Sequence record: OR258281.1
Direction: 5' to 3' (one strand)
DNA: 64,000 nucleotides
Part shown: positions 17,543 through 59,195 of the stretch, in pieces
Position numbering within the stretch: the first letter of the stretch is position 1
Layout: the number at the start of each line of letters is the position of its first letter
The notes under the pieces: model-generated
What the model was told of the DNA's origin: nothing
Database searches by the model: none
The model's input: only the letters and a program-made list of their open reading frames with translations
Translations under genes and position numbers: made by a program

Positions 17543-17923
17543 TTGTTTGTATTACTGAAAGAACACCTTCATATTGAATACATACTAGGGGCAATTGTGG
17601 ATATAATTGATTTTCTACAAAATGCAACGGAAGTAAAAAATTTACCAAACCGGTATAATTTTTATTATAACGAAATAAGATATAAAATTGACTGCACTAA
17701 ACTATCAATTACTATACTAAGGGAAATTACATTAAGTGATATTATGGGAGCGATAAATGGAAAAGCTCCAGAAAATCATATACATACGTTTTTTGTACCT
17801 GAATCAGAAGACCATGCATTTAATTTATCACTAATGTGTATAGATCATATTCCATATGAGCATTTAGGTACATATAAAAGCTTTATTTCTAAAATTGACG
17901 TAAGGTGTTTAAGTGAACATTAA
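17543..17923 (+). CDS. DEFFN-motif family protein
   Basis: EDHAFNLSL near the C-terminus. Confidence 0.6.
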   Translation: MFVLLKEHLHIEYILGAIVDIIDFLQNATEVKNLPNRYNFYYNEIRYKIDCTKLSITILREITLSDIMGAINGKAPENHIHTFFVPESEDHAFNLSLMCIDHIPYEHLGTYKSFISKIDVRCLSEH

Positions 17924-18218
17924 AGAATTTTTAGAAACAGCAGTACTTTCAAGTCTATTGACCTATCAATACAAAGGAAGGGCATATACAGTTAAGTGTA
18001 CTGATACCTACATTCGTATTGCATTAAAACTACGACCTTTGATCTTAACATCAACTACAGGTTCAACAATCGATTCAAAAAGAGATATTTTCATTTTTGT
18101 AATACCTGAAGCAGTTGATGACGCTTTTAATTTGAGTACTACGAATGAACACGTACTTCCCTTTGAACTTCTTGATTTGTACTTAAAATTCAAAAAGAAT
18201 CATGAAACAAAGAACTAA
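17913..18218 (+). CDS. DEFFN-motif family protein
   Basis: DDAFNLST; paralogue of the previous ORF. Confidence 0.6.
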   Translation: MNIKEFLETAVLSSLLTYQYKGRAYTVKCTDTYIRIALKLRPLILTSTTGSTIDSKRDIFIFVIPEAVDDAFNLSTTNEHVLPFELLDLYLKFKKNHETKN

Positions 18219-18231
18219 TGTGTTCTATACT
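18203..18231 (+). promoter_or_regulatory. phage-type promoter TGAAAC-N17-TATACT (copy 1)
   Basis: One of five copies with identical spacing. Confidence 0.7.
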
Positions 18232-18235
18232 ACTA

Positions 18236-18940
18236 GGGAGACTTGAAAAAGCCTCCCTTTTTTACAATCCTGATTGGTGCACCCGTTTAGTAGTGGTGAG
18301 TACTTAAGAGTTAGTACTTGCTTGGTGTAATGATATATTCCTGATCCTATCGAAAACGTAGATGGCAGATGAGTTGTCCAAACAGAACGATGAGCAAATG
18401 AGACCCGTGAAGATTTTACAGTGCACGGCAATGCGGCTCAATAAAAGTACCGGATAATACCCCGTAGGTACTCTTGATAGACATATATGGCTAAGACCCA
18501 TACCAAATGGTATAAGGGAATCTAAGTACTATACCAGATTCTGCTTCTGATTTCTATAATATAAATCCGTCCAGAATTCCTGAGTACTTCAGATAGATAT
18601 TAGTATTGATCGTATTGTACTAATATTGAGTGTAGTGATGAGCTACGACCGTTGCATATGAACAGTGATAGGAAGAAACCGGGCAACCCGCTTCCGTGTA
18701 TACAATACAATTCACAATACGATTGAATGATGACTACCAGCGTCAAAATTAGTTTATTCATCCCTCTTGTGGGGGATGGAAATGAATTCAGTCAAACCGC
18801 GTCAAGTAGTAATTGCTGTTAAAGCTATCTATAATTGTAGTAGTTTTAAAATTAATTATAACTGATTTGATATGAGAAATGAATGAACGTAGTGAATTCA
18901 TTACGAATGAAAATCTTGACTTACGAAGTAAGGCAAACAA
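18236..18940 (+). ncRNA. candidate large structured non-coding RNA (or replication origin region)
   Basis: About 700 bp with no credible ORF, directly behind a promoter, with many hairpins. Confidence 0.4.
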
Positions 18941-19318
18941 ATGTCTGATACCAATAATAGTCCATATGATGATGATTTTAAGTCATTTCTAAAAGGACTA
19001 GATTCTTCATGTATTAGTGGCAAAATCATGATTGAACCTGGTGTATCTATTACTGCGATGATTTATTTCAGTAATGGTAATACTATTTTTGTTTCTCAAA
19101 TGATTACCAGAGTAGTAAGTTACAGGAATGCAAGTAGAGATCTTATTCTGTACACAGAAGAAGGCTTGGACGAGGATGATTTTTTTAATAAAAACATGCA
19201 AAGAGAAATCTCATGTATCATCAAGTCCAGTAGTATCAAAATGATACGTGATAAGATGAAACAGTACTTACAGTCTGAAATAAAAAACCTACAAGACTTA
19301 ATAGACCTACTATCATGA
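18941..19318 (+). CDS. DEFFN-motif family protein
   Basis: EDDFFNKNM. Confidence 0.65.
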   Translation: MSDTNNSPYDDDFKSFLKGLDSSCISGKIMIEPGVSITAMIYFSNGNTIFVSQMITRVVSYRNASRDLILYTEEGLDEDDFFNKNMQREISCIIKSSSIKMIRDKMKQYLQSEIKNLQDLIDLLS

Positions 19319-19698
19319 AAACTACGCAATGTATATTAGATAAACTATCTAGTGACGATTTTTCGCTTGAATTGAAAACTAAACCTAAACCTGGAGAAAC
19401 TGGAGTATATATCTGGTTTTTGATACACTATAAACAATATAGTTACCAATCATTTCTTAATTTAGGGAATTCTTTTTGGTTCAAAACGTTAAATGAAGGA
19501 ACTTTACTTGCTAAAAATGATAATAGTCCATTTCTTGAGACGGATGAGTACTTTAATCTCAATATCCTAAATCCAATTCCAGACTTCTTACTTAAAGATA
19601 ATTACTGTAAGATTTATTATCAAATAAAAGATAGATTAAAAAGCATATATAGGCATAGTTATAGATACGAAATTTTCATGAGAATTAACGGTGAATAG
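19315..19698 (+). CDS. DEFFN-motif family protein
   Basis: TDEYFNLNILNPIPDFLLK. Confidence 0.65.
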   Translation: MKTTQCILDKLSSDDFSLELKTKPKPGETGVYIWFLIHYKQYSYQSFLNLGNSFWFKTLNEGTLLAKNDNSPFLETDEYFNLNILNPIPDFLLKDNYCKIYYQIKDRLKSIYRHSYRYEIFMRINGE

Positions 19699-20038
19699 TA
19701 CTGATATAGTGATACAAAAAATAATAGATGGAGATTATACTATTACCAGAACTTATTCTGGATGTGAAGTAATATATGTTAAATATAATTCAAAAAATAG
19801 AGTTGAACTATGGCTAGAACATTCTCTTTCTATTACCACATTTAGTTCAAGCTATGCACAGTATCTTAGAACTAAAAAACTACCAGTTGATGGATTAAGT
19901 GCTGATGAGTACTTTAATATGTCGTTAGAGTTGGATGTACCGGATATTGTATTAAAAGATAATATTAAAAAAATTATCAATTCATTTAAAAATAATATTA
20001 ACCAATCTGCATATAGCATAGAGATAAAATTATGTTAA
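19691..20038 (+). CDS. DEFFN-motif family protein
   Basis: ADEYFNMSLELDVPDIVLK. Confidence 0.65.
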   Translation: MNSTDIVIQKIIDGDYTITRTYSGCEVIYVKYNSKNRVELWLEHSLSITTFSSSYAQYLRTKKLPVDGLSADEYFNMSLELDVPDIVLKDNIKKIINSFKNNINQSAYSIEIKLC

Positions 20039-20496
20039 GTACAGAAAACCTTTTAGATGTACTTCAAAAAAAGACTTACAACAAAATGATTTGTACTAAT
20101 TTTATTAGTACTATCAAAAAGTATTTTCGTAACAGAAAAGACTTTAAAAGAAAGAAATTCAGTATTTCTTATTCCTATAAAGTTGATAATGAAGATATAC
20201 GCATTTTCATTTCAGAAACAGGCGTTAAGTATTCTGTCTTCAATACCAACATTTCTAAATATCAGTCATTCAGTGGCTGTGTACCAAAATACTCATCTCA
20301 AGATTTTATGAATCCTGATGAGTATTTTAACAAAACAATTACTGAAGAATTTCCAGATATTGTTCTGAAGAAAAACCACGATAAAATTGTGGAGTTTTTC
20401 AAAACAAGTAAAATACGACATTTCTCCTGCATTGAAGATGTAGTAGATGAGTCATTCGATATGTTCAACAAATATTTGTACCCTAACTATCTCTAG
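20032..20496 (+). CDS. DEFFN-motif family protein
   Basis: PDEYFNKTITEEFPDIVLK. Confidence 0.65.
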   Translation: MLSTENLLDVLQKKTYNKMICTNFISTIKKYFRNRKDFKRKKFSISYSYKVDNEDIRIFISETGVKYSVFNTNISKYQSFSGCVPKYSSQDFMNPDEYFNKTITEEFPDIVLKKNHDKIVEFFKTSKIRHFSCIEDVVDESFDMFNKYLYPNYL

Positions 20497-20504
20497 GAGA
20501 TTAT

Positions 20505-20976: not shown

Positions 20977-21005
20977 TGAAACGATTTTGAAAGATGTACT
21001 ATACT
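20977..21005 (+). promoter_or_regulatory. phage-type promoter TGAAAC-N17-TATACT (copy 2)
   Basis: Ends 10 nt before tRNA-Ser. Confidence 0.75.
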
Positions 21006-21686: not shown

Positions 21687-21911
21687 ATGGCAAAGACTTA
21701 TAAACCTGAAGTTCACTCCGAATATGAAACGTATTGGGGTGAAGAAAGTGTTTACCATTCAGCACGAATGGTCTACGATAAGCACGGAAAATATGTGACT
21801 TTAGACTCACATTTGAGTACTGTTAATACTCTAATCAGAGTACAGAATAAAAACAGAAAATTCAAAGAAGAAATTGAACGTCTTAAAGAAGAAATTAAGA
21901 AACTAAAATGA
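21687..21911 (+). CDS. hypothetical protein
   Basis: GAGG SD; coiled-coil tail. Confidence 0.6.
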   Translation: MAKTYKPEVHSEYETYWGEESVYHSARMVYDKHGKYVTLDSHLSTVNTLIRVQNKNRKFKEEIERLKEEIKKLK

Positions 21912-22372
21912 AAAACTCAGTGACTGAATATTTGAAGTTAATAATGCGTTATCTTAAAGTTGATACGTTTGAAGATATTACTGATTATAATTACCGTCAT
22001 CAAACTGAATTTAAATTTGAATCAAAAAGAAAGTTTTTACTACAGAAATATATTTCTTCTAGATATAAAAAAGATGAACCAATTGTACCACTGATTTATA
22101 GTTTGTATTATAATGGTTTCTTTATTACCTATAGAACGGTCACAAAGAACTTAGAATTCAGAATGCATCAATTTCAAAAAGGTTCTATCACAGTAGATAT
22201 ACCACTTGATATCGATTCTAAAGATGAATTCTTCAATTTTGCACTTGAAAATAACATTGGTTATTTAAAGCTTGAAGACTTAGATATACTCCGTGAAATT
22301 GTAGAAATTATTAAAATAACTACTAAAAGTGGTGGATATTCGGATAAACTTTATGCAAATCAAAACAATTGA
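21908..22372 (+). CDS. DEFFN-motif family protein
   Basis: KDEFFNFALEN. Confidence 0.65.
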   Translation: MKNSVTEYLKLIMRYLKVDTFEDITDYNYRHQTEFKFESKRKFLLQKYISSRYKKDEPIVPLIYSLYYNGFFITYRTVTKNLEFRMHQFQKGSITVDIPLDIDSKDEFFNFALENNIGYLKLEDLDILREIVEIIKITTKSGGYSDKLYANQNN

Positions 22373-22796
22373 AACGCATCTCAGGTTAATGAAGTACTAT
22401 CTGAAAAATGATAATATGTGTAAACATTCAGATGATTCTGACATTACTGATTATCCCACACTTGAGTTTAAATCTGAGAGGATAAGTCTTAGCACTCAAG
22501 TATGTAATAGAATTGATAATACATACAGTACTTTAATTGAAGTACGTTATGGTACTGTAATGATAATGTTCGGTACTGAGTACTATAACACGGGTTATAT
22601 GTATGTACATAATAAACCTTTTTCGAAGGAAAACAGTTTATTAACTGTACCACGTGGTATTGAAACTATTGATGACTTCTTCAATTACATATTAGTACAC
22701 GATACGCCTTATTTTGAATATGATATAATTCCAGTACTGAATGAAATTGTTGTTTTGGTAACTGAATTTTTGAAATTGAAGTGTAAGTATTTTTAG
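22353..22796 (+). CDS. DEFFN-motif family protein
   Basis: IDDFFNYILVH; N-terminus resembles neighbours (LRLMKYYL / LKLIMRYL / LKLMLHFL). Confidence 0.65.
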   Translation: MQIKTIETHLRLMKYYLKNDNMCKHSDDSDITDYPTLEFKSERISLSTQVCNRIDNTYSTLIEVRYGTVMIMFGTEYYNTGYMYVHNKPFSKENSLLTVPRGIETIDDFFNYILVHDTPYFEYDIIPVLNEIVVLVTEFLKLKCKYF

Positions 22797-22802
22797 GTAC
22801 TT

Positions 22803-23225
22803 ATGAAAAAATCTATTGGGTCTTGTCTCAAATTAATGTTACATTTTTTGCAAAAAGATGAACTTATTACAGACAATGATAAAAAACATAGTATAAGTTC
22901 ATACATAGCAGAATTAAAGTCTGAAAGGCTTGATGTATTAATATCAGGCCACACCGGTACTATAAGTACAAGTACATTATTGTATGTGCATTACAATGAT
23001 ACAAAAATATATATCAAGAACAGTAAAGTTTATATTGCTACGAAAAAGTTTGGTGACGAAGCCAGAAGTTTTTCTGCACCAATCGAAATTGCGGATAAAG
23101 GTGAATTTTTTAATTATGTATTAGAAAATGATGTTGATTGTCTAAAATTTGAAGACCTTGATACTGTTAGATCTATCCTTGATGTTTTAAGTGAAAAACG
23201 TTCAAATTTGTTTAAAAAAACGTGA
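22803..23225 (+). CDS. DEFFN-motif family protein
   Basis: KGEFFNYVLEN. Confidence 0.65.
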   Translation: MKKSIGSCLKLMLHFLQKDELITDNDKKHSISSYIAELKSERLDVLISGHTGTISTSTLLYVHYNDTKIYIKNSKVYIATKKFGDEARSFSAPIEIADKGEFFNYVLENDVDCLKFEDLDTVRSILDVLSEKRSNLFKKT

Positions 23226-23251
23226 AACGTTTTCGAAATATGTTCTATACT
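23223..23251 (+). promoter_or_regulatory. phage-type promoter TGAAAC-N17-TATACT (copy 3)
   Basis: Precedes a structured RNA and tRNA cluster. Confidence 0.75.
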
Positions 23252-23864: not shown

Positions 23865-24095
23865 ATGAATAATTCAGAGATACGTCAATATCGAATTACT
23901 ATGGTTATGTACTTTACCCAACAAGAACGGTTCTATGATTTATATATCAATGATCGTCTGAAGTTATGTACTGAAGCAATGTTTTTTATAGAATTGCTTT
24001 ATTCTAACGAAATTGATAATACTGATTTCAAACTATACAATGATGGAATCAATATTTGTAATAACATTTATCAAAATCTGAAATCAAGTCTATGA
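23865..24095 (+). CDS. hypothetical protein
   Basis: 76-aa ORF chained to the next gene. Confidence 0.55.
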   Translation: MNNSEIRQYRITMVMYFTQQERFYDLYINDRLKLCTEAMFFIELLYSNEIDNTDFKLYNDGINICNNIYQNLKSSL

Positions 24096-24487
24096 TTAAC
24101 ATAGAGTTACTAGATAAAATCGATAGCTTTTTGAGTACTACAACTCGTAAAGATTTCAACGCCAGTCATGATTATATTGGTGCATTAAAGTACTCTCGTG
24201 ATATAGAGAATGCATCTGTCGAGTTGTGGTTAACTATACAAGGCCATATATATACTTTTATGATTGTTAGTAGTGATCAGTATACTTATCTATCACAACT
24301 AACTAGTGAAATCATAGTATGTAATTATAATAAAGCCATTAGCTTTAATATGGATAATATAGAGTCTGATGATGACATATTCAATATGTCCTTATTAGAA
24401 GATGTTCAAGGTATTACAGTTGAAGTACTAAACAAAATAAAACAATTGCAAGATAAAACAATCAAAATTATTGAGGATTATACATGA
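24092..24487 (+). CDS. DEFFN-motif family protein
   Basis: DDDIFNMSLL. Confidence 0.65.
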   Translation: MINIELLDKIDSFLSTTTRKDFNASHDYIGALKYSRDIENASVELWLTIQGHIYTFMIVSSDQYTYLSQLTSEIIVCNYNKAISFNMDNIESDDDIFNMSLLEDVQGITVEVLNKIKQLQDKTIKIIEDYT

Positions 24488-29086: not shown

Positions 29087-29647
29087 ATGAAAGCTCTGGT
29101 ACTTGCTAGTTACGCAGAAGATGAAGAATCACGTTCATCATATGAAGAATGTACTATTATCGGTTATGACCGTGATAAGTACTGTGATTACAAAACACCA
29201 GACTTTGATAGTATTCAAAGTACTAAAGCTGGACATTTCCGTAACCTGGATATGTCCTTCATCAATCCCCGCCAATTTGCTTCATTACCGATTACCCGTA
29301 CTGATTCAGCAGGTCTTACGTACTATATTCGCCGCACTAAGCGTGATGTACAGAAAGAAATCAAAGAGAAGTATAAAAGTAAGACACAGTATCTTGTGTA
29401 TATTGGTGACGGTACTAACAATCCATATTCTAATATGTCATACGACTATAGGTTAACAGTACCAACGTTTGACAAAGCTGTAAAGTACTTTCATAGATAT
29501 ACTCATGTTGATATCATGCAGACTGTTGAAGATAAACGTGGTTACAGTAATAACCAAGTACTTCACAAAGATCCTAAAGATGAATATTACTGCGTTGATT
29601 CTTCTGGTAAGAGTGTAATTTCAAGTAAACGGTTGAATAAGGTATGA
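29087..29647 (+). CDS. hypothetical protein
   Basis: AAGGA SD; 186 aa. Confidence 0.65.
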   Translation: MKALVLASYAEDEESRSSYEECTIIGYDRDKYCDYKTPDFDSIQSTKAGHFRNLDMSFINPRQFASLPITRTDSAGLTYYIRRTKRDVQKEIKEKYKSKTQYLVYIGDGTNNPYSNMSYDYRLTVPTFDKAVKYFHRYTHVDIMQTVEDKRGYSNNQVLHKDPKDEYYCVDSSGKSVISSKRLNKV

Positions 29648-30186
29648 TTAGTACTAAAGAACTGATCAAAATGTTAAATACAGGCTCTGATAAAATCTCA
29701 GTCTATACGCATTATCAAAATAATACCAAAAAATCAGCAAGACTTGTTGAAAAGATAATTAATATACATGAAAACAAAGGTATTGCACCCTATACGTCAC
29801 TCACAAAATTAATAGATTTCTTGAGAAAGGAATATCATAAATCATTAAAGTATCTACCGTACTTCACTGATTCCAGAGAGTACGAACTCTCACTGAGTAT
29901 TCAGAGAGGCCATGCTAAGTATCGTATTACCAATAAAGTAGTACAGGTTTATACTATAGATTGTGATGGTGATGAGGAATATATCTTTAACAGTACTGAT
30001 GGTATGAGTAATGAAGATTTTTTTAATCTCAGTCTAAGTACTCATGTATGTGATGTGGTACTTGATGAAAACGTTAAACAGATTCGTAAAGTACTGAAAA
30101 GTAAAAAGCGTAAAGCAGCATATGTTTATAGTTATCATAACCACAATATTAACTACCAATATAGACTTAAGAGAAAGAAAGCATGA
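29644..30186 (+). CDS. DEFFN-motif family protein
   Basis: NEDFFNLSLSTHVCDVVL. Confidence 0.65.
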   Translation: MISTKELIKMLNTGSDKISVYTHYQNNTKKSARLVEKIINIHENKGIAPYTSLTKLIDFLRKEYHKSLKYLPYFTDSREYELSLSIQRGHAKYRITNKVVQVYTIDCDGDEEYIFNSTDGMSNEDFFNLSLSTHVCDVVLDENVKQIRKVLKSKKRKAAYVYSYHNHNINYQYRLKRKKA

Positions 30187-30683
30187 ATGCTCAAGATGTA
30201 CTTCATCTTTTGAAGAATCATAAAAAACATTTTTATTATGCTTACACCAAAAAAACACAAACTACTAAGTCCAACAAATATCTCAAAAAAGCCAAAGCTA
30301 AGAACTTTGGATCAGTAAGAGCAAAGTACTTCAAAAAAGCAAGAGAAGCAATCCGTGTTATGCCTTATCATAGTCGTTCTGATGAATTTACTGTTTCAAT
30401 TCAGTTAATGATAGATATGTACAACTATCTTCAAATAAGTATCAGTAATTCAGAAGTTCATTTATACGTGTTTAATGTGCGTATGCCTGAACCGATTGAT
30501 TTATATTACGGGAAGACGGGTTTAGAACGAGACGATTTTTTCAGTATTAGTTTGACTTACAATATTCCTCAATTGGTACTAAGTACCGAAATTGCTAAAC
30601 TTCGCCGGGACTTTCCAAAAAAGCTGCGTCAGAAATATTTTCAGATGAATAATGGAACCGTGAAAAAATTTGAAACGTTTTAA
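30183..30683 (+). CDS. DEFFN-motif family protein
   Basis: RDDFFSISLTYNIPQLVL. Confidence 0.65.
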   Translation: MNAQDVLHLLKNHKKHFYYAYTKKTQTTKSNKYLKKAKAKNFGSVRAKYFKKAREAIRVMPYHSRSDEFTVSIQLMIDMYNYLQISISNSEVHLYVFNVRMPEPIDLYYGKTGLERDDFFSISLTYNIPQLVLSTEIAKLRRDFPKKLRQKYFQMNNGTVKKFETF

Positions 30684-30699
30684 AAATGTGTCCTATACT
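30671..30699 (+). promoter_or_regulatory. phage-type promoter TGAAAC-N17-TATACT (copy 4)
   Basis: Identical spacing to the other copies. Confidence 0.75.
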
Positions 30700-30710: not shown

Positions 30711-31268
30711 ATGATTGATGCTAATAAGGTTTTCAGATCTCTCTATAAAATTAGATTCACCGATATGATAAATCGGTATAGAGCCGGATGTGTAAAAGAA
30801 GTTGATAAATTAAGAAAACACAGGATCTTGAATAGTAAGATTAATAATCGTTTGCTTTCAGGAATCAAGTTCTATTACAAGTTCTTTAATAAGTTATCTA
30901 ACAAGAGTCTAGCACCTGTAGTAGTGGATGATAGAAAATTTTGTATTGACATTTACCAGAATTATTCTCCAAATTCTTATAATAAAAATTTAACCTTAAT
31001 CAGTATTACTGAATCCAGGGTTTACCTTGAAGTCCTTCATGAAGTAATAGTTTCATGTGCTGATGGACTTGATGATGATGAAATGTTTAATGCAAAATTA
31101 AGATGTGATGTACCTGATATTGTCAGTAAAGCTGAAGTACTTAAGCTTCGTAAATTGATTAAAGACAATAAAAAATATCAGTGCAAAAAGTACTTGCTTT
31201 ATTTTGATAATGACGATAATCAAGTAATTCCGTACTTTACGCGGATGAGCCGTTTGTCTAAGATTTAA
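30711..31268 (+). CDS. DEFFN-motif family protein
   Basis: DDEMFNAKLRCDVPDIVSK. Confidence 0.65.
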   Translation: MIDANKVFRSLYKIRFTDMINRYRAGCVKEVDKLRKHRILNSKINNRLLSGIKFYYKFFNKLSNKSLAPVVVDDRKFCIDIYQNYSPNSYNKNLTLISITESRVYLEVLHEVIVSCADGLDDDEMFNAKLRCDVPDIVSKAEVLKLRKLIKDNKKYQCKKYLLYFDNDDNQVIPYFTRMSRLSKI

Positions 31269-43410: not shown

Positions 43411-43436
43411 AACGCTTTATGAATGTGTCCTATACT
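43408..43436 (+). promoter_or_regulatory. phage-type promoter TGAAAC-N17-TATACT (copy 5)
   Basis: Upstream of a small ORF and the RNA array. Confidence 0.75.
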
Positions 43437-44873: not shown

Positions 44874-45200
44874 ATGAATGAACTAGAGACATTAATACAT
44901 GAAGTGCATGATCACTTAGTAAACAATGCTATTTTAGACCCGACTATAAGAATTATAGCTCGTGCAAAAAATTTCAATATTAAGTACTTTAAGTTCAATA
45001 TATACCTGTGTTCCAGTAAAGTACTATATGGTGATGGCTGCGATGCACATGAAGTACCTTACTACTTTGAGAAAGACCATTATTTTAATGCAAGTTTAGA
45101 AAATGATATTAAAATCGATTTCAACACTATGGTAAAAATTGCATCTATACTTGAGTACTATAATATTCCCTATAGGTCATTTAATGATAGAGCCTACTAA
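44874..45200 (+). CDS. DEFFN-motif family protein
   Basis: KDHYFNASLEND. Confidence 0.62.
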   Translation: MNELETLIHEVHDHLVNNAILDPTIRIIARAKNFNIKYFKFNIYLCSSKVLYGDGCDAHEVPYYFEKDHYFNASLENDIKIDFNTMVKIASILEYYNIPYRSFNDRAY

Positions 45201-45564
45201 AATAATAAAAAAGTTGCATGAATGTATTGGGAATATCCACTTTGAATTTAAACGTAAGGGCGAAAGTGAAATATGGAAATGCCGTATAGAATATGGTATT
45301 CAAATTACATGTATTGCTGGTGTTTCACCTTGCCTTTATATAATACACAATGACAAACAAGTTCTTTTTATTACTGATCGAACGGTAGCACAAAATAAAA
45401 TCAAAATAGAAAACTATCATGTTTTGCAAAATAAAGATGAATTCTTTAATTTTATAATGCTAAATGACAGTGCAGGTTTTAATCGTATTGATTTTGTGCG
45501 TTTGCCAGAAATATATGAGTACTACATACATTTGTTTCAAAACCGAAAAATAAAAGTGCCGTAA
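45184..45564 (+). CDS. DEFFN-motif family protein
   Basis: KDEFFNFIMLND. Confidence 0.62.
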   Translation: MIEPTKIIKKLHECIGNIHFEFKRKGESEIWKCRIEYGIQITCIAGVSPCLYIIHNDKQVLFITDRTVAQNKIKIENYHVLQNKDEFFNFIMLNDSAGFNRIDFVRLPEIYEYYIHLFQNRKIKVP

Positions 45565-45737: not shown

Positions 45738-45881
45738 GGGGATATTCTACCACTTGCAAATCAACAAGAATTTGATCAACTCAGCGTTGGTTGAACGGTG
45801 GCTGGTGAGATTGAAACAGTACCATGGTGTGCACAAACTGGTACTGATTCAGAGTTGGTTCGATTCCGCTCTATCCCTTCA
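45738..45881 (+). ncRNA. tRNA-like RNA with acceptor and T-arm but an expanded body
   Basis: GGGGATA/TATCCCT acceptor, TTCGATT T-loop, CAGTACCA/TGGTACTG arm; no encoded CCA. Confidence 0.6.
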
Positions 45882-45887
45882 AATTTC

Positions 45888-45912
45888 AAGACTCGCATTG
45901 CGAGTCTTTTTT
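45888..45912 (+). terminator. intrinsic terminator after the ncRNA pair
   Basis: AAGACTCGC-ATT-GCGAGTCTT plus T tract. Confidence 0.8.
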
Positions 45913-45927
45913 GTTGGTTCAAAAAAA

Positions 45928-46323
45928 ATGAAACTTGATGAAATAGTACCAATGGTACTCAACGGAAACTATACTTGCCGTGCTTACGATTCAGTTAATA
46001 CTAGGTTAGTCGTCAGATTAACTATTGATGACCCGTATAAAACTGAGGCATTGATGGTATCAGGAAATTATGGCGTCAGGATTAATTTCAATACAGATAA
46101 TGTATGCATTAGACTTGGTACGGATAATGAAATAGGTTATTGTCTTGATTATATTAAATCCACGAATAAATCATTTAGTAAGATACCAACTGAACCGGAT
46201 GATATTTTCAATTTTAAAATAGTTAATGATTTTAATTTAGACGAAGACTTTAAAATGGCAATTTATAAACTGGCTGAAAGTTTTAACGTAATATATAAAA
46301 AACGGTACAATTTAAATGAATGA
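45928..46323 (+). CDS. DEFFN-motif family protein
   Basis: PDDIFNFKIVND; start taken as MKLDEIV after the terminator. Confidence 0.62.
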   Translation: MKLDEIVPMVLNGNYTCRAYDSVNTRLVVRLTIDDPYKTEALMVSGNYGVRINFNTDNVCIRLGTDNEIGYCLDYIKSTNKSFSKIPTEPDDIFNFKIVNDFNLDEDFKMAIYKLAESFNVIYKKRYNLNE

Positions 46324-46702
46324 AATTATAAACAAAGTACTTGATAAACAATTCTCAGTGCTACATCATTCTTCCGAAAACGGATTGTTTTTACTCTTTG
46401 TAAAAATCGGAAATATCACTGAATTAATGATAAATGTCTCTAGAAGTGGAATATTTGTCATTGGATTTTTTCAGATAGATTTTGAATTTGTGGTGCAGGA
46501 TGTATCAAAATTCGATATTTTTTATAAAGTATCAGATAATCCTAACTATGAAGTACTTCCAAAAACGACAGATGATATTTTCAATTTTAATTTAGTACAT
46601 TCAATTGATATATCTAATCCAAAAATTGGAGAATTCGTTCATGCATGTCATGAATTATATCATGATGAATTGTATAAAAACATACAGAATGTGTTACCAT
46701 GA
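46316..46702 (+). CDS. DEFFN-motif family protein
   Basis: TDDIFNFNLVH. Confidence 0.62.
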   Translation: MNEIINKVLDKQFSVLHHSSENGLFLLFVKIGNITELMINVSRSGIFVIGFFQIDFEFVVQDVSKFDIFYKVSDNPNYEVLPKTTDDIFNFNLVHSIDISNPKIGEFVHACHELYHDELYKNIQNVLP

Positions 46703-47111: not shown

Positions 47112-47486
47112 ATGAAAAGAAGTAGTGTAATATATTTCTGTAAAGAACTGGACAAAGATAAAGTACAGCTTAATAAACTATCAAGTACATATAATGCTGT
47201 CTTCTATGATGTTAAGTTAGGAAGAAGTACTTTCTATGTAACTTATAATAAAAACAAGAAATCAGTCATGCTTAATGCTGACGACTATCTGGTTAAGATG
47301 TGTAATGATAAAAACGTATCAGTTACCGTCAATCAAGTTAATACATATAATTCGGTACTTCTTCCTGCTGCATTAGCTACTAAAGATGAGTGGTTTAATT
47401 TTAATCTAATCTGTGATCTCCAGAAAAATGAAGTACTGATCATAAGAAAAGGAATGTACAAGTTACATTACATGGTTAATAAATGA
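47112..47486 (+). CDS. DEFFN-motif family protein
   Basis: KDEWFNFNLICD. Confidence 0.62.
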   Translation: MKRSSVIYFCKELDKDKVQLNKLSSTYNAVFYDVKLGRSTFYVTYNKNKKSVMLNADDYLVKMCNDKNVSVTVNQVNTYNSVLLPAALATKDEWFNFNLICDLQKNEVLIIRKGMYKLHYMVNK

Positions 47487-47866
47487 ATTATAATGAATTT
47501 ATTGAAAAAATTTTAGAGACAAAGCCTGAGTTTATTAGAAATATTAACACTCTACATTTTAATATTGAAGATATGTACTTAGAGGTTAACTTTGACAGTG
47601 GGTATTTTTTAGTTGAGCGACGATTTATAGATGACGAAGGATATCAAGTCGTAGCTTGCTGGAACGTCTATGAGTTAGATTATGTTAATGTTATATTAGC
47701 TAAAAACCATCAAGAATACCTTGATGAAATGGATGTAATACCAGATAACCTTAGCAAAGATGATTTTTTCAATTACACAGTTAACCATGAAGTCTTAATT
47801 TCATACGAAGAGTACCTTAATTTACATAACGTGTATAAAAGACTGGAAGAATTTTATGGAATTTAG
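47483..47866 (+). CDS. DEFFN-motif family protein
   Basis: KDDFFNYTVNH. Confidence 0.65.
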   Translation: MNYNEFIEKILETKPEFIRNINTLHFNIEDMYLEVNFDSGYFLVERRFIDDEGYQVVACWNVYELDYVNVILAKNHQEYLDEMDVIPDNLSKDDFFNYTVNHEVLISYEEYLNLHNVYKRLEEFYGI

Positions 47867-48287
47867 TATATCAGATTGTTATAATGCATTTAATAATGAT
47901 TATGTTTCAGTACTAAATCGTTATCGTTCACGTATAGTATTTGAATGGGGTCAATACATCTTAAAATTTAATATAGTAGAGACCATATATAAAGGATACT
48001 ATACTATTAAATTAAAAAATGATGCAAGTGTAGTATATGATGAATATGGTACATATACTAACCAATGCAGATTTGTAGTGGATTTTAATACTATTATTCC
48101 AGTTACTGATTTACACATCAAGTTCGACAGTGAATCTAATTTAGAAGTACTTAGACTTAATTGTACAAAAGATGAGTATTTTAACTATTGTTTATACTAC
48201 GATACTCCTTTCAAATTTGAAGAACTCCATTTTTTTGAAAAACTGTACCATCTAGTACAAAGGAAATATTTTGATGAAAAATCATAA
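47856..48287 (+). CDS. DEFFN-motif family protein
   Basis: KDEYFNYCLYYD. Confidence 0.65.
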   Translation: MEFSISDCYNAFNNDYVSVLNRYRSRIVFEWGQYILKFNIVETIYKGYYTIKLKNDASVVYDEYGTYTNQCRFVVDFNTIIPVTDLHIKFDSESNLEVLRLNCTKDEYFNYCLYYDTPFKFEELHFFEKLYHLVQRKYFDEKS

Positions 48288-48666
48288 TAAAATAATCGAA
48301 GAATTTTGGAAGTACTTTGAAGAAGCAATTGAGTCTGATAAGAAATTTCATTCCTTCTATCATATTTTCACAATGGATATTGACAAATACAATATAGTTT
48401 TGGGATCTGATTATTTCATTATCAGAATTCAAAATGACCCAATTGTAGCGTTCAATGATACTAAAGATCTTAATAACTATATTATTACGCATGACTTTCC
48501 ACTTAAAAATCATACTCCTTATTTTAAATCTCATGATGAATATTTCAACTACAGTTTAGAAAATGAATGTGTACTTACATGGGATAGTATATTGGTAATT
48601 GATAAAATTATTGATAAGATCCATTCAATGCAAATTCCATTTAAAGTACAAAGCAGGCAGATATAA
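48271..48666 (+). CDS. DEFFN-motif family protein
   Basis: HDEYFNYSLEN. Confidence 0.65.
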   Translation: MMKNHNKIIEEFWKYFEEAIESDKKFHSFYHIFTMDIDKYNIVLGSDYFIIRIQNDPIVAFNDTKDLNNYIITHDFPLKNHTPYFKSHDEYFNYSLENECVLTWDSILVIDKIIDKIHSMQIPFKVQSRQI

Positions 48667-48669
48667 TTT

Positions 48670-49131
48670 ATGGCTATTGATAGTAGTTCATATTATTACA
48701 GAAGTACTACTGATATTATGATAGGAAACATGACATTGCTGGAAAAATTGAATATGATCTATGATATTCTGCCTTATGCATGTTTAAGTACTTCAGATGT
48801 GATATATGTACTAACTGGTATGGGAATAGATGATTTAAATAGATTTCGAACTCCTGAAACTGAGACTCAAACAGTTAGAACTTATTTCTTCTCCAATGAC
48901 AAGCTCGGAATTGAGTTGGAAATCTGTGACGATACGACTGTTTTCAGAACAAATACCAAAATAGTAATATTAAGATTATCTCAAAATAATTTTTCTTTTA
49001 ACGGATATTATACTGTTAACTATATTGAAACTAAAGAAGACCATTTCAATGAAACCATGATGAATCCAGACATAACAGATTGGGAAATTTATGAAATGGT
49101 ACAGAAGATTAAGAATGCCCTTCCTACATAA
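48670..49131 (+). CDS. DEFFN-motif family protein (divergent)
   Basis: KEDHFNETMMN. Confidence 0.6.
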   Translation: MAIDSSSYYYRSTTDIMIGNMTLLEKLNMIYDILPYACLSTSDVIYVLTGMGIDDLNRFRTPETETQTVRTYFFSNDKLGIELEICDDTTVFRTNTKIVILRLSQNNFSFNGYYTVNYIETKEDHFNETMMNPDITDWEIYEMVQKIKNALPT

Positions 49132-49174: not shown

Positions 49175-49540
49175 ATGTTTCACACAAAATTACAAGTTGA
49201 GCTACAAGACGATGGAAGTACCTGGAAAACTCTTCAGGATTTAGTTTATGAAGATGAGATGGAAGGGTTCATAGGCGTCCCTGAAGCGTATTTGACGGAC
49301 TTTGCAAGCGTACCCCGAATCCCGGTTGTCTTTGACCTCGTAGGCGATTATGGACACGCTGCCGCCACTGTACATGACTATCTGTATGACCACGGAAAGA
49401 TCACACGTAAAGAAATCGATAAAGTGTTTCATAGAGCACTACTTGATACCGGAGTTGGAAAGTTCAGATCATACATCATGTATAAAGGTGTGAGACTTTT
49501 TGGTTTTATAGCGTTCAGAAACGCACGCAAAGGAAAATAA
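49175..49540 (+). CDS. DUF1353-family protein
   Basis: VP...LTDFASVPR..AATVHDYLY motif. Confidence 0.8.
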   Translation: MFHTKLQVELQDDGSTWKTLQDLVYEDEMEGFIGVPEAYLTDFASVPRIPVVFDLVGDYGHAAATVHDYLYDHGKITRKEIDKVFHRALLDTGVGKFRSYIMYKGVRLFGFIAFRNARKGK

Positions 49541-49953
49541 TGAACATTGATTATTTCAAGAAACAAGATATTAAAAACATGCAATCTGCTCTCAGATATG
49601 TTATCGATAATTTTGACAGGATCAAAACGGTACTTAACGAAGACCTCATAGCAAAAACCTCTCCGGTATCTATTAAGTACCCAAGAAATTATTGTCATAA
49701 CGTCAATGTAGAAGTACTTAAGTCCAAGATTGTTATTATAAACACCCATAGATATGCTTTTATTTTTGATGATCATACAATAATTAAGAGATGTGGAGTT
49801 GTTACCTATAACTTTCAACATGATTTAAGCAAAGATGAATTTTTTAATATGAGTATTAATTATGATACTTATGGGTTAACCTTTGAGGATCTTGAAATAA
49901 TCAGTACTATCAAAACTGTATTAGGAGGTATTATTAGTGGGCAACAATGTTGA
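49540..49953 (+). CDS. DEFFN-motif family protein
   Basis: KDEFFNMSINYD. Confidence 0.65.
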   Translation: MNIDYFKKQDIKNMQSALRYVIDNFDRIKTVLNEDLIAKTSPVSIKYPRNYCHNVNVEVLKSKIVIINTHRYAFIFDDHTIIKRCGVVTYNFQHDLSKDEFFNMSINYDTYGLTFEDLEIISTIKTVLGGIISGQQC

Positions 49954-54394: not shown

Positions 54395-54769
54395 ATGACT
54401 GAACTATTAGAATTCTTCTTGAATGATAGTAACTATTTTATAGAGGAAGAATTTCGCCAACATAAGAATTACACTTACAAAGATAAGAGTACTTCAGAAG
54501 TACAGTTGTATATTAGGGAAACTTGTTTAGTAAAAATAATATGGTTTAAAAAATTATCAATACATATTAATAGAAAACAAATACTCGTAGTACTAGACAG
54601 TTCATCTTTTACTTTAGAGTATTTGTTAGAAGAATATAAAGATAATAGTCTTTTTAATATAAGCCTGAATTACGATACTTCAGTCTTTATGAATTTATTT
54701 TCTTGTGCTGATTTTGAACGCTTCATCGAAATAGCAAAAAAACTCCATAAAGATTTAAAAACTGCTTAA
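54395..54769 (+). CDS. DEFFN-motif family protein (divergent)
   Basis: DNSLFNISLNYD. Confidence 0.6.
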   Translation: MTELLEFFLNDSNYFIEEEFRQHKNYTYKDKSTSEVQLYIRETCLVKIIWFKKLSIHINRKQILVVLDSSSFTLEYLLEEYKDNSLFNISLNYDTSVFMNLFSCADFERFIEIAKKLHKDLKTA

Positions 54770-56055: not shown

Positions 56056-56085
56056 TACCATTAGCAGTACCTCACATTAATAAAA

Positions 56086-57559: not shown

Positions 57560-57584
57560 GAGGCTTCACCACAGGAGACAGTAA

Positions 57585-57839
57585 ATGAACTTACCAGATG
57601 AATTAGTACTACTGCGTACCCGAATCCTTGAAAATCAGGGAAAAGTTGATTCTCTTGACTCTGAAATTAAAGAACTCTTCACTAAAAAAATTCTTGTTAT
57701 TGATAAGAACAATAACGTTATTACTAAAGAAGTACAAGAAATCTCAAACAAGATTGAATATAACTTTAAAATTAAAAGTGATTACGAAAACCGCGTAAAA
57801 CGCGACAAAGAATTAGTACTTAGTACCGTACTCGCTTAA
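57585..57839 (+). CDS. small coiled-coil protein
   Basis: AGGAG SD. Confidence 0.62.
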   Translation: MNLPDELVLLRTRILENQGKVDSLDSEIKELFTKKILVIDKNNNVITKEVQEISNKIEYNFKIKSDYENRVKRDKELVLSTVLA

Positions 57840-57846
57840 ATCTTCT

Positions 57847-57870
57847 AATCCCCTACTTGGGGATTTTTTT
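57847..57870 (+). terminator. intrinsic terminator
   Basis: AATCCC/GGGATT plus T tract. Confidence 0.65.
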
Positions 57871-57883
57871 ATGGTAAAATATA

Positions 57884-58348
57884 ATGTTCAGAAAAATTCT
57901 GGAAGAAAATAATATTCAGGATGTGCTTCACAATATCAGATCAGAATTTAAAAATTCCGTAAGTGCAATTCGTGTTTTTGGAAAAGCTGAAAGTACTAAT
58001 TATACTAAAGCTACATATGGCGGTGCAAACTTGCTGGATAAAAAGTGCAGATACGTTACTATTAATAACGATAAAGTACGTATATTAATACGATACAACA
58101 ATGAAGTACTAGAAGCACTAAGTATTGATGTCAAATCTAATCACGATCAAATAATTTATCATCTTGAACGTAATACTTTTGAATATTTCTTCGGTACTGA
58201 GGGAGTTTATAGGATCGAAATGCCAGATATGGAAGATAAAGAATATATCTTTAATATGTGCATTCAATATCCAGAACTTGATATTATTGGAATTAAAAAC
58301 GATATGCAGTGGCTTATCGAAAAGTACGGAATAGTGAAATACTTATGA
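57884..58348 (+). CDS. DEFFN-motif family protein
   Basis: DKEYIFNMCIQYP. Confidence 0.62.
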   Translation: MFRKILEENNIQDVLHNIRSEFKNSVSAIRVFGKAESTNYTKATYGGANLLDKKCRYVTINNDKVRILIRYNNEVLEALSIDVKSNHDQIIYHLERNTFEYFFGTEGVYRIEMPDMEDKEYIFNMCIQYPELDIIGIKNDMQWLIEKYGIVKYL

Positions 58349-58803
58349 TTGGTCTTAAGGAAGCAGTACTTAAACACCGTGTTTCTGAATTAATCAGTGA
58401 TGTTAGTGAAAGAAACATTGACTACAAAAACGATAATTTTTTCAATTTTAAAGAATGTTATATTATTGGTACTAACGTCCATTACAAACAGGGAAGTTTA
58501 GCCGGGTTATGTAAATTGCATTACGTAAAGGGTAATAAACTTTTTCGTATATTTTTTAACGATAGAGTACTCGGCACGATTTCTATAATGAGGAATCGTA
58601 TGGTAATGACTAAAGACCACACCAGTATTACTGTAGAACTGGATTTTGCTTCTTTACTTGATAAAGAATATATTTTTAATGAGACCATCAGGCTATCTGG
58701 TACACCTCTTATATCAGAAATGGATATACCTGAATTATTCAGTGATATAAACTGGATATATGAAAACTTTGGAGTACTTAATGTACCAGGAAGTGGCGAA
58801 TGA
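58345..58803 (+). CDS. DEFFN-motif family protein
   Basis: DKEYIFNETIRL. Confidence 0.62.
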   Translation: MIGLKEAVLKHRVSELISDVSERNIDYKNDNFFNFKECYIIGTNVHYKQGSLAGLCKLHYVKGNKLFRIFFNDRVLGTISIMRNRMVMTKDHTSITVELDFASLLDKEYIFNETIRLSGTPLISEMDIPELFSDINWIYENFGVLNVPGSGE

Positions 58804-59195
58804 TAAATTTACTACTTGACGGGAAAGTTATTAATGAGTTATTAAATCCAAAACAACTTTCAGTTGGTGCACTGTACTATGATGAAAACGAGATTCATTT
58901 CTACCGGACTAATATTTCGGATAAAGTTACTTATCTTAATCTTTATATAAAATATGGTTCAGTGAATTGTTCACTTAAGTATGTGTGTAACAAATTCAGT
59001 ACAATTGAGTATGATAATGATAGGTACTATTGCGATAGGCAGGACTTTATATTAAATTCAGTACCCTATTCTGAACAGGACTTTAATGATCCGGGATTTG
59101 AATTTAATTTAAGTATACTGGACGATATAGATTATAAGTTCTTCAGGCTCTTTAAAGAACTCAGAAGTACCAGATTTTTGTTGAGTTTTCCTTGA
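58800..59195 (+). CDS. DEFFN-motif family protein (divergent)
   Basis: PGFEFNLSILDD. Confidence 0.6.
   Translation: MINLLLDGKVINELLNPKQLSVGALYYDENEIHFYRTNISDKVTYLNLYIKYGSVNCSLKYVCNKFSTIEYDNDRYYCDRQDFILNSVPYSEQDFNDPGFEFNLSILDDIDYKFFRLFKELRSTRFLLSFP

What the first reader, a model, noticed from the sequence alone, without database searches (positions are those of the whole stretch)
17543..59195. About 30 hyper-diverged small paralogues sharing a C-terminal [DE][DE][YF]FN-x-x-[LIV] motif
Seen: I count 31 ORFs of about 100-185 aa (starts 17543, 17913, 18941, 19315, 19691, 20032, 21908, 22353, 22803, 24092, 29644, 30183, 30711, 40106, 42669, 43015, 44874, 45184, 45928, 46316, 47112, 47483, 47856, 48271, 48670, 49540, 49937, 54395, 57884, 58345, 58800) with a motif like KDEFFNFSL..D at a similar distance from the C-terminus, followed by a short helix, while the N-terminal beta-rich parts look unrelated. 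They occur in tandem runs. Inference: an arsenal with variable target-binding N-domains and a constant docking tail, for example anti-defence proteins, adaptors for the phage ClpP, or cargo tagged for capsid loading.
Basis: partly seen in the sequence, partly recalled or inferred. Interest (0 to 1): 0.75.

Follow-up and report, generated by a model that had tools for sequence, protein, structure and literature searches.

The report
Giant paralogue family in jumbo phage
The window comes from Xanthomonas jumbo phage XaC1, and its roughly 30 small genes with a shared C-terminal motif belong to an uncharacterised, fast-evolving family of at least 67 paralogues (about 12% of the phage's genes) that E. 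coli and Klebsiella jumbo phages also carry; its function is unknown but is probably host interaction before the late phase of infection.

Summary
The window is Xanthomonas phage XaC1 (OR258281.1, bases 284968-348967).

**Window members.**
- 26 are recruited by an iterative profile at E<1e-3, with no shuffled, reversed or minus-strand ORF recruited.
- 2 are tied to neighbouring members by phmmer.
- 1 is marginal and 2 are unconfirmed.

**Whole genome.** The same profile finds 67 members in 28 tandem runs, covering 8.9% of the genome. All 67 have the invariant F and 60 have the following N.

**Other phages.** 50-kb stretches of E. coli phage EJP2 and Klebsiella phage RaK2 each hold 12 members. 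In these the N is usually replaced by Q.

**Known families.** Pfam, NCBIfam, PADLOC, PDB sequences and PDB folds gave no match. PHROGs gave only small families of unknown function.

**Structure.** AlphaFold models (pLDDT about 70) place the motif in the best-predicted helix of one compact alpha/beta domain. It does not look like a detachable tail.

**Evolution.** Orthologues diverge about four times faster than interspersed genes (dN 0.174 vs 0.040). dN/dS stays below 1.

**Reading.** Most likely this is a diversified set of soluble binder proteins expressed before the late genes, for host takeover or counter-defence. The family is shown; the function is inferred. I rate it a new member of a known kind (virus multigene expansions), interest about 0.6.

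The parts
17597..17923 (+). Family member (XaC1_449; the longest ORF starts at 17543)
   Evidence: Genome-wide iterative HMM E<1e-3; F-N core present; BLAST pair with 17913
17913..18218 (+). Family member (XaC1_450), the shortest at 101 aa
18941..19318 (+). Family member (XaC1_452)
   Evidence: (leave-one-out E 4.5e-7)
19315..19698 (+). Family member (XaC1_453)
   Evidence: BLAST cluster of 6
19691..20038 (+). Family member (XaC1_454); second AlphaFold model
   Evidence: Leave-one-out E 8e-11; model pLDDT 69.6, motif helix at residues 71-78
20032..20496 (+). Family member (XaC1_455)
21908..22372 (+). Family member (XaC1_461)
   Evidence: BLAST cluster of 3
22353..22796 (+). Family member (XaC1_462)
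22803..23225 (+). Family member (XaC1_463; annotated start 22836); first AlphaFold model
   Evidence: Leave-one-out E 4e-9 over residues 1-130; model pLDDT 72, motif helix at residues 99-109
24092..24487 (+). Family member (XaC1_468)
29644..30186 (+). Family member (XaC1_480)
30183..30683 (+). Family member (XaC1_481); has S in place of N after the F
30711..31268 (+). Family member (XaC1_482), directly downstream of a promoter-like motif
40106..40555 (+). Unconfirmed candidate (XaC1_510)
   Evidence: Motif-like string with Q, but HMM E 0.19 among decoys and no phmmer link
42669..43028 (+). Family member (XaC1_520); has Q in place of N
43015..43410 (+). Family member (XaC1_521)
44874..45200 (+). 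Family member (XaC1_524)
45184..45564 (+). Family member (XaC1_525)
45754..46323 (+). Family member (XaC1_526); the family domain lies in roughly the last 130 aa (from about 45928)
   Evidence: (match to residues 111-192 of the longest ORF)
46316..46702 (+). Probable member (XaC1_527)
   Evidence: HMM E 0.05, ahead of the first decoy; phmmer link to neighbour 45754-46323, E 0.007; clear F-N core
47112..47486 (+). Family member (XaC1_530)
47483..47866 (+). Family member (XaC1_531)
47856..48287 (+). Family member (XaC1_532)
48274..48666 (+). Family member (XaC1_533)
48670..49131 (+). Family member (XaC1_534)
   Evidence: Recruited in the genome-wide iteration
49540..49953 (+). Family member (XaC1_536)
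   Evidence: Leave-one-out E 9e-10; 88% identical orthologue in L004
49937..50407 (+). Family member (XaC1_537); has S in place of N
   Evidence: orthologue 74% identical, dN/dS 0.38
54395..54769 (+). Marginal member (XaC1_544)
   Evidence: HMM E 0.04, ahead of the first decoy; orthologue in L004 only 49% identical, the most diverged gene of that stretch
57884..58348 (+). Family member (XaC1_552)
   Evidence: not recovered in the 23-member leave-one-out
58345..58803 (+). Probable member (XaC1_553)
   Evidence: BLAST and phmmer link to 57884-58348 (E 0.0014); family HMM alone gives E 0.8
58800..59195 (+). Unconfirmed candidate (XaC1_554)
   Evidence: F-N-x-S string present, but HMM E 1.3 among decoys and no phmmer link
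18203..18231 (+). Phage promoter-like motif (TGAAAC ... CTATACT class)
   Evidence: 37 sites genome-wide, all on the + strand
20977..21005 (+). Phage promoter-like motif of the same class
23223..23251 (+). Phage promoter-like motif of the same class, just after the 21908-23225 run
30671..30699 (+). Phage promoter-like motif of the same class, 12 nt upstream of member 30711
43408..43436 (+). Phage promoter-like motif of the same class, just after the 42669-43410 run

Best explanation
These genes are a massively expanded, lineage-specific family of small (101-197 aa), soluble, single-domain alpha/beta proteins of RaK2-like jumbo phages. XaC1 has at least 67 copies in 28 tandem, mostly overlapping runs.

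**Shown.**
- Common descent of the copies.
- Conservation at the protein level, not the DNA level.
- Presence in three phage genera that infect different hosts.
- Purifying selection combined with unusually fast divergence.

**Predicted at moderate confidence.** The fold runs: N-terminal helix, a 3-5-stranded beta meander, then a conserved C-terminal module (motif helix, loop, long helix, and in the second model a last strand). The motif forms the packed core, with an invariant F and a neighbouring N or Q. It is not a free tail.

**Inferred.** The copies sit in operon-like arrays behind a phage promoter class that also precedes replication genes, so they would be made before the late genes. 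Each copy would use its fast-changing sheet and loop surface to bind a different host or competitor protein. This would be a diversified binder set for host takeover or counter-defence, comparable to the multigene families of large eukaryotic DNA viruses. No enzymatic role is expected, because no polar residue is invariant.
For: **Family and census.**
- Iterative profiles recruit 23 window ORFs and 67 genome ORFs, with 0 of about 3500 decoys and 0 of 486 minus-strand ORFs.
- Leave-one-out recovers 21 of 23.
- F is present in 67/67 and N in 60/67.
- Motif enrichment is more than 100-fold over shuffles.
- Motif codons vary synonymously.

**Single domain.**
- Leave-one-out matches often span most of the protein.
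- The N-parts alone carry a signal: 42/67 beat their own decoys against 11 expected, p=4e-17.
- Two AlphaFold models of distant members share the architecture, and their highest pLDDT (83-93) lies on the motif and following helix.
- BFVD fold hits (probability 0.9-0.99, TM about 0.5) are uncharacterised proteins of RaK2, PBECO4 and Yersinia fHe-Yen9 phages.

**Distribution.** There are 12 members each in 50-kb stretches of EJP2 and RaK2, with 0 decoys. Metagenomic relatives show synteny.

**Selection.** For the family, dN is 0.174 and dN/dS 0.36. For interspersed genes, dN is 0.040 and dN/dS 0.09 (p about 1e-4). No gene exceeds 1. The N-part evolves faster than the C-part.

**Physical properties.** The proteins are soluble and of mixed charge: no TM segment and pI 4.2-9.9.

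**Expression class (inferred).** The TGAAAC...CTATACT motif occurs 37 times, always on the + strand. Sites lie a few hundred nt or less upstream of the annotated DNA polymerase, SSB, primase, topoisomerase and late sigma factor genes, and also within the family arrays. The CBB paper describes the same motif class and proposes the syntenic region as early, host-takeover genes (PMC5259590).

**Not virion.** 0 of 12 RaK2 members is annotated 'virion structural protein'.
Against: - No functional evidence of any kind exists. The binder and host-takeover role is inferred from gene position, size, lack of catalytic conservation and evolutionary rate.
- dN/dS is below 1 everywhere, so positive selection is not shown. 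Fast change could be relaxed constraint alone.
- The AlphaFold models are only moderately confident (pLDDT 70-72), with disordered stretches in the variable part. Only two members could be modelled.
- The N-part signal could reflect a shared secondary-structure pattern, not strict homology. The alignment used for that test had been built with the left-out sequence present.
- Expression timing rests on a sequence motif and on a proposal made for another phage, not on data from XaC1.
Confidence: 0.5

Rival explanations
1. Unrelated target-binding N-domains are each fused to a constant C-terminal docking module that delivers them, or their targets, to one common partner such as the phage ClpP/ClpS/Lon-type proteases.
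For: - Most of the detectable family-wide conservation lies in the last 45 or so residues.
- Charged residues before the F are well kept.
- XaC1 encodes ClpP, a ClpS-domain protein and a 775-aa ATP-dependent protease.
- The N-part evolves faster than the C-part.
Against: - The invariant residue is a hydrophobic F inside the most confidently predicted helix of a compact domain.
- In the second model the chain returns to a final strand after the C-terminal helix; an aromatic column near the C-terminus is shared by 45 of 67 members.
- The N-parts share a weak family-wide signal, and two distant members share a predicted architecture.
- No partner has been identified.
Confidence: 0.2
2. The proteins associate with each other, as homo- or hetero-oligomers, through the conserved helix-loop-helix. 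This would build a mixed assembly and not target host proteins one by one.
For: - The module is conserved while the rest varies.
- Many copies are co-transcribed and translationally coupled: 39 neighbouring pairs, mostly overlapping by 4-8 nt.
Against: No evidence of oligomerisation exists; the monomer models are compact. This mechanism would not by itself explain the fast divergence of the variable part.
Confidence: 0.1
3. The arrays are immunity- or antitoxin-like proteins. Each would neutralise a different toxin or effector from the host or from competing phages, as in the tandem immunity-gene arrays of polymorphic toxin systems.
For: The genes form tandem arrays of small, hyper-diverged, non-enzymatic alpha/beta proteins that evolve fast.
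Against: - 80 members showed no recurrent match to any Pfam immunity family; there was a single Imm59 hit at E 0.007.
- PADLOC gave no match.
- No toxin genes are annotated next to the arrays.
Confidence: 0.1
4. The proteins are cargo packaged into the capsid (internal proteins) and injected with the DNA.
For: Their small size and large number; a gene annotated as a head maturation protease lies among the arrays.
Against: - 0 of 12 RaK2 members carries the 'virion structural protein' label, although six other ORFs in the same 50 kb do (the RaK2 authors based structural annotation on similarity and/or MS/MS, PMC3622015).
- No XaC1 member is labelled virion structural.
- The conserved element is C-terminal and internal, unlike an N-terminal targeting peptide.
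Confidence: 0.05
5. The pattern is an artefact: chance motif matches in AT-rich ORFs, a DNA-level repeat, or decaying non-functional duplicates.
For: The genome is AT-rich (33% GC). Most pairs are undetectable by BLAST.
Against: - Enrichment is more than 100-fold over shuffles, with zero hits in 486 minus-strand ORFs.
- No decoy was recruited.
- Motif codons vary synonymously.
- All copies are intact ORFs with dN/dS 0.07-0.55.
- The family is conserved in three phage genera.
Confidence: 0.02

Closest known systems
Lineage-specific expansions in jumbo phages: the roughly 35-copy zinc-ribbon family of Bacillus phage G (Iyer et al. [quoted passage not shown]
   Same: One protein family is multiplied many times within a single giant phage genome. 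The copies are mostly hypothetical proteins and are closer to each other than to anything else.
   Different: - This is a different fold, with no zinc ligands.
- It has about twice as many copies (at least 67, or 12% of genes).
- The copies are so diverged that BLAST links only a handful. The CBB authors counted only 22 paralogous ORFs in total (PMC5259590).
- In the papers I could search, the family itself is not delineated or named.
Multigene families of large eukaryotic DNA viruses (for example the MGF families of asfarviruses, or poxvirus host-range families); comparison made from general knowledge, not tested here
   Same: Tens of tandem paralogues lie near the genome ends, evolve fast, vary in copy number between relatives, and are presumed to act in host interaction.
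   Different: - The host is bacterial and the fold is unrelated.
- Each copy is a single small domain, not a repeat protein.
- No functional data exist.
Tandem immunity-protein arrays of bacterial polymorphic toxin systems (SUKH and Imm families); comparison made from general knowledge
   Same: Arrays of small, hyper-diverged, non-catalytic alpha/beta proteins.
   Different: There is no recurrent sequence match to those Pfam families and no adjacent toxin genes. The arrays are encoded by a lytic phage.
PHROGs 24321, 17453, 24941, 23322 and 27549 (all of unknown function)
   Same: A few members match these at E 1e-4 to 3e-6. They are probably fragments of the same superfamily drawn from RaK2-like phages.
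   Different: Each PHROG captures only 2-6 of the 80 proteins scanned. None carries a function or unites the family.

Membership tests
Any curated protein family (Pfam-A, NCBIfam, PADLOC) | A recurrent, significant profile match across members | tested here: not met
   80 members against Pfam: 48 different families each hit by a single member, best E 2.8e-4. NCBIfam and PADLOC gave single stray hits only.
Any protein with a solved structure | Sequence-profile or fold match to a PDB chain | tested here: not met
   Profile A1 had best E 0.043. The cross-genus profile A4 had 0 hits at E<=10. Foldseek with both models found no hit at E<=0.001 and the listed top-50 hits had TM below 0.4. The models are only moderately confident, so a distant fold match could have been missed.
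Virus multigene family / lineage-specific expansion | Many paralogues of common descent in one genome | tested here: met
   67 members with 0 decoys; leave-one-out recovery.
Virus multigene family / lineage-specific expansion | Tandem clustering | tested here: met
   28 runs; 39 neighbouring pairs, mostly overlapping by 4-8 nt.
Virus multigene family / lineage-specific expansion | Faster evolution than neighbouring genes, and copy-number change between relatives | tested here: met
   dN 0.174 against 0.040, p=8e-5. Between the orthologues of window genes 16923 and 24484, the distant relative L005 has 5 profile hits and XaC1 has 10. Close relatives keep one-to-one synteny.
Capsid-targeted internal proteins (T4-type cargo) | Presence in purified virions | tested here: not met
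   0 of 12 RaK2 members is annotated 'virion structural protein' (the RaK2 authors based structural annotation on similarity and/or MS/MS, PMC3622015). This is indirect: no XaC1 virion proteome was available.
Capsid-targeted internal proteins (T4-type cargo) | N-terminal targeting peptide removed by the head protease | not tested
   The conserved element here is C-terminal. Cleavage sites were not examined.
Short linear docking motif or degron | The motif lies in an exposed, flexible segment outside the folded domain | tested here: inconclusive
   Both models put it in a helix with the highest pLDDT, and the invariant residue is hydrophobic. These are predictions only, and I had no access to coordinates to measure burial.
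Protease adaptors (ClpS-like or ClpXP adaptors) | Direct binding to the protease or unfoldase | not testable with these tools
   The phage encodes ClpP, a ClpS-domain protein and a Lon-like protease. There are no interaction data.
Polymorphic-toxin immunity arrays (SUKH/Imm) | Match to SUKH/Imm profiles and adjacency to toxin genes | tested here: not met
   One Imm59 hit at E 0.007 among 80 members. No toxin is annotated beside the arrays.

The most novel reading that the evidence does not exclude
RaK2-like jumbo phages carry a genome-encoded 'binder library'. One small scaffold, held together by the conserved C-terminal helix module, is copied about 70-80 times per genome, and its variable face is diversified so that each copy neutralises a different host factor or defence protein. 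It would be the largest single-family expansion I know of in a phage, and a bacterial-virus counterpart of the host-range multigene families of giant eukaryotic viruses. It could help explain how phages at 33-35% GC infect hosts as different as Xanthomonas (about 65% GC), E. coli and Klebsiella.
Probability: 0.3. Interest if true: 0.8.

Novelty: new member of a known kind. Interest (0 to 1): 0.6.

Why it matters
About one gene in eight of a 349-kb phage, and comparable numbers per 50 kb in E. coli and Klebsiella jumbo phages, belongs to one family. Current annotation lists these genes as unrelated 'hypothetical proteins' and splits them over several orphan PHROGs.

- **Annotation.** Recognising the family removes a large part of the 'dark matter' of RaK2-like genomes. 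It also yields a profile that can annotate 77 or more related genomes.
- **Function.** It focuses the question of function on one scaffold instead of 70 orphans.
- **Evolution.** Fast divergence under purifying selection makes the family a natural data set for studying how phages diversify host-interaction proteins.

If the members are binders of host or defence proteins, they would be a rich source of new inhibitors. If they are not, the conserved module still marks an unknown fold worth solving.

Tried and rejected
**Searches that led nowhere.**
1. All-against-all BLASTP links only small clusters, so it is too insensitive for this family.
2. Pfam, NCBIfam, PADLOC and PDB sequence profiles gave nothing recurrent.
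3. Foldseek against PDB with both models gave no significant hit. The top hit, p32/gC1qR, had E 0.09 and TM 0.2, and I rejected it.
4. The profile search of 1.84 billion representatives gave only 38 hits, nearly all XaC1 itself or close metagenomic relatives. The top hit, P0001, is a giant repeat protein: 16 near-identical repeats of about 7.6 bits each, individually insignificant. I rejected it as score summation.
An exact DNA-pattern scan of IMG/VR returned only chance hits, none encoding a member.
6. tblastn of single members against the phage collection finds only XaC1.
7. The search for homologous proteins with the alignment returned 3 XaC1 proteins.

**Tests that came out negative or uninformative.**
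8. The sigma-70 consensus scan shows no enrichment. A phage-specific motif was found instead.
I complied and used only window proteins and returned proteins.
10. The DNA-mimic idea was rejected because pI ranges from 4.2 to 9.9.
11. An enzyme was rejected because no polar residue is invariant.
12. A membrane or secreted protein was rejected because there is no hydrophobic segment.
13. A first leave-one-out run on N-parts timed out and was redone.

**Literature.** The PA5oct omics paper and the Avs5 paper had no bearing on this family.

Full report
**What the window is.** The first 12 kb match Xanthomonas phage XaC1 (OR258281.1, 348,967 bp) at 100% identity, so window coordinate = record coordinate minus 284,967. 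XaC1 is a 33-35% GC jumbo myovirus isolated on X. vesicatoria. Its paper reports 550 ORFs, 426 of them hypothetical, and does not mention paralogues (PMC11273794). A tblastn search with the window's sigma factor places XaC1 in the RaK2-like clade (77 records). Identity is about 40% to GAP32, CBB and fHe-Yen9-04, and about 30% to Asteriusvirus and to RaK2/K64-1. All 31 ORFs of the finding exist and are annotated 'hypothetical protein'.

- A motif pattern built round the F-N core hits 14 of 150 plus-strand window ORFs; shuffles give 0.05.
- Genome-wide it hits 32 of 697 plus-strand ORFs, 0 of 486 minus-strand ORFs, and 0.28 in shuffles.
- Codons at the motif positions vary synonymously: TTT 42/TTC 25, AAT 45/AAC 15, and GAT, GAC, GAA and GAG all in use. 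The conserved object is therefore a peptide, not a DNA repeat.

**Homology within the window.**
- BLASTP joins only clusters of 6, 3, 2 and 2.
- An iterative HMM seeded on the cluster of six recruited 14 and then 23 window ORFs. None of about 1400 shuffled or reversed decoys was recruited.
- In leave-one-out, 21 of 23 scored E<2e-3, often over most of their length.
- 46316 and 58345 are linked to neighbouring members by phmmer.
- 54395 is marginal. 40106 and 58800 remain unconfirmed.

**The family is much larger than the finding.** I fetched the rest of the record and iterated the profile over all 1183 ORFs of at least 50 aa.
- It converged on 67 plus-strand ORFs. None of about 3500 decoys and none of 486 minus-strand ORFs was recruited.
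- Seven more real ORFs score ahead of the first decoy, six of them carrying the motif, and about eight motif-bearing neighbours sit in the twilight zone. The true number is probably 75-80.
- The 67 lie in 28 runs at record positions 34-45, 50-62, 82-91, 101-110, 123, 261-262 and 302-343 kb. They cover 8.9% of the genome. Neighbours mostly overlap by 4-8 nt.
- Shares by column, relative to the invariant F (67/67), are:

| Position | Shares |
|---|---|
| -4 | K 35 |
| -3 | D 44, E 12 |
| -2 | D 30, E 25 |
| -1 | Y 22, F 17 |
| +1 | N 60, S 4 |
| +2 | L 29 |
| +3 | S 34, T 7, N 7 |
| +4 | L 38, I 9, M 8 |
| +7 | D 25, E 16, N 11 |

- The F lies 27-68 residues from the C-terminus.
- Members are 101-197 aa, with pI 4.2-9.9 and no hydrophobic segment.

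**Outside XaC1.**
- The XaC1 profile, iterated on a 50-kb stretch of E. coli phage EJP2 (Asteriusvirus), finds 12 members with no decoys.
- The same procedure on Klebsiella phage RaK2 also finds 12.
- In both phages the residue after the F is usually Q, and the preceding residues are mostly T/S-E-E.
- Metagenomic contigs from close and distant XaC1 relatives carry syntenic members.
- A full HMMER pass over 1.84 billion representatives gave only 38 hits, nearly all of them XaC1-like. This reflects the family's extreme divergence more than its rarity, since EJP2 and RaK2 members would not reach significance in a database of that size.

**What is it like?**
- No member set gives a recurrent hit in Pfam, NCBIfam or PADLOC.
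- PHROGs returns only five small families of unknown function, each covering 2-6 of 80 proteins.
- PDB sequence profiles give nothing.
- Two AlphaFold models were built, using alignments restricted to window proteins and returned proteins. Member 22803 has pLDDT 72 and member 19691 has pLDDT 69.6.
- Both show an N-terminal helix, a beta meander of 3-5 strands, the motif as a short helix, a loop and a long C-terminal helix. The second model adds a final strand.
- The motif and the following helix have the highest confidence, at 83-93.
- Foldseek finds no PDB analogue.
- It does find uncharacterised proteins of RaK2, PBECO4, slurp01 and Yersinia fHe-Yen9-03/04 in BFVD, at probability 0.9-0.99 and TM about 0.5.

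**Are the N-terminal parts related?**
- At BLAST level they hardly are: only 7 of 67 N-parts, cut six residues before the F, have any partner.
- A family-wide leave-one-out profile beats the best of 335 decoys in only 11 of 67 cases.
- The same test against each protein's own five decoys is won 42 times against 11 expected (p=4e-17, +4.6 bits).
- Together with the shared predicted architecture, this favours one diverged domain over unrelated domains fused to a tag. The evidence is moderate.

**Evolution.** I compared 32 orthologue pairs between XaC1 and close metagenomic relatives.

| Gene set | n | Median identity | dN | dN/dS |
|---|---|---|---|---|
| Family members | 15 | 70% | 0.174 | 0.36 |
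| Interspersed non-family genes | 17 | 92% | 0.040 | 0.09 |

- The Mann-Whitney tests give p=8e-5 for dN and p=1e-4 for dN/dS. No gene exceeds 1.
- Within members the N-part changes faster than the C-part (dN 0.241 against 0.164, p=0.008).
- Close relatives keep one-to-one synteny. A distant relative has about half as many copies in one interval.
- The genes are therefore functional and under purifying selection, but evolve unusually fast. Positive selection is not demonstrated.

**Expression class (inferred).**
- The generic sigma-70 scan is not enriched.
- A motif of the form TGAAAC(G), about 13 nt, then TGT[TC]CTATACT occurs 37 times in the genome, always on the + strand. Five of these are in the window.
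- Sites lie a few hundred nt or less upstream of the annotated DNA polymerase, SSB, primase, topoisomerase and late sigma factor genes, and within or beside family runs. One lies 12 nt upstream of member 30711.
- The CBB paper describes the same -35/-10 pair. It proposes the syntenic block of short hypothetical genes around the RpoD-like sigma factor as early, host-takeover genes (PMC5259590).
- None of the 12 RaK2 members carries the 'virion structural protein' label, although six other ORFs in the same stretch do. The RaK2 authors based structural annotation on similarity and/or MS/MS (PMC3622015).

**Explanation.** The best-supported reading is a lineage-specific expansion of one small soluble scaffold. 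Its conserved C-terminal module is the structural core, and its variable sheet and loops diversify quickly. It is expressed before the late genes and probably acts by binding host or competitor proteins. The family, its scale, its distribution and its rates are shown. The fold is predicted. Timing and function are inferred.

Capsid cargo is disfavoured. Artefact, DNA repeat and pseudogene explanations are excluded.

**Novelty.** The RaK2 paper says nearly 10% of its proteins are paralogues, without defining families. The CBB paper counted 22 paralogous ORFs. The broad jumbo-phage survey highlights a roughly 35-copy zinc-ribbon expansion in phage G but not this family. I found no description of this family in the papers searched. 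It is a new protein family within a known kind of phenomenon.

**Limits.**
- Only two structure jobs and three fold searches were allowed.
- Only 50-kb samples of EJP2 and RaK2 were examined.
- The orthologue fragments come from several samples.

Noticed in passing
window 18203-18231, 20977-21005, 23223-23251, 30671-30699, 43408-43436; 32 further sites in L002, L003, L008-L011: A strongly conserved promoter-like motif (TGAAAC(G), about 13 nt, TGT[TC]CTATACT) occurs 37 times in XaC1, always on the + strand. Sites lie shortly upstream of replication genes and the late sigma factor as well as small-gene arrays. It matches the 'divergent RpoD-like' promoter described for phages CBB and GAP32 (PMC5259590).
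   Followed up: partly
window 60070-61221, 61313-62437, 62448-63593 (minus strand): Three tandem paralogues of 374-383 aa lie on the opposite strand (BLAST cluster). One is annotated 'GTPase regulator'. EJP2 has an 'RCC1 repeat domain protein' on the minus strand at the end of its equivalent region.
   Followed up: no
window 8018-11464: Two TerD-family paralogues are followed by a TelA-like 'toxic anion resistance' gene. The same order is kept in a distant metagenomic relative (L005) and TelA is also present in RaK2.
   Followed up: no
window 16611-16920, 33612-34029, 34323-35071: Three further small tandem paralogue pairs unrelated to the main family.
   Followed up: no
P0001 (2689 aa) and P0021 (1610 aa), from the representative search: Giant repeat proteins topped the profile search (E 7e-16). 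This happened only because 16 near-identical repeats each add about 7.6 bits. Each repeat has a motif-like acidic-F-[NS] stretch, which is probably chance.
   Followed up: yes
window 12135-12644: This ORF scores E 0.018 against the family profile but lacks the motif and has no phmmer link. It is probably not a member.
   Followed up: partly
whole window: The phage has 30-39% GC, while its Xanthomonas host has about 65% (PMC11273794). It carries eight tRNA genes scattered among the family arrays.
   Followed up: no
window 35075-35347, 44071-44787, 49175-49540: Some annotated names inside the small-gene arrays look doubtful for their size and context: a 90-aa 'alanine-tRNA ligase', a 'head maturation protease', and a 'tail assembly chaperone' whose orthologue carries DUF1353.
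   Followed up: no
L002 1-32000 (start of the XaC1 record; terminal repeat according to PMC11273794): About 70 very small ORFs are regularly spaced with 70-100-nt gaps. None belongs to the family, and the first member starts at about 34 kb, just past this block.
   Followed up: no
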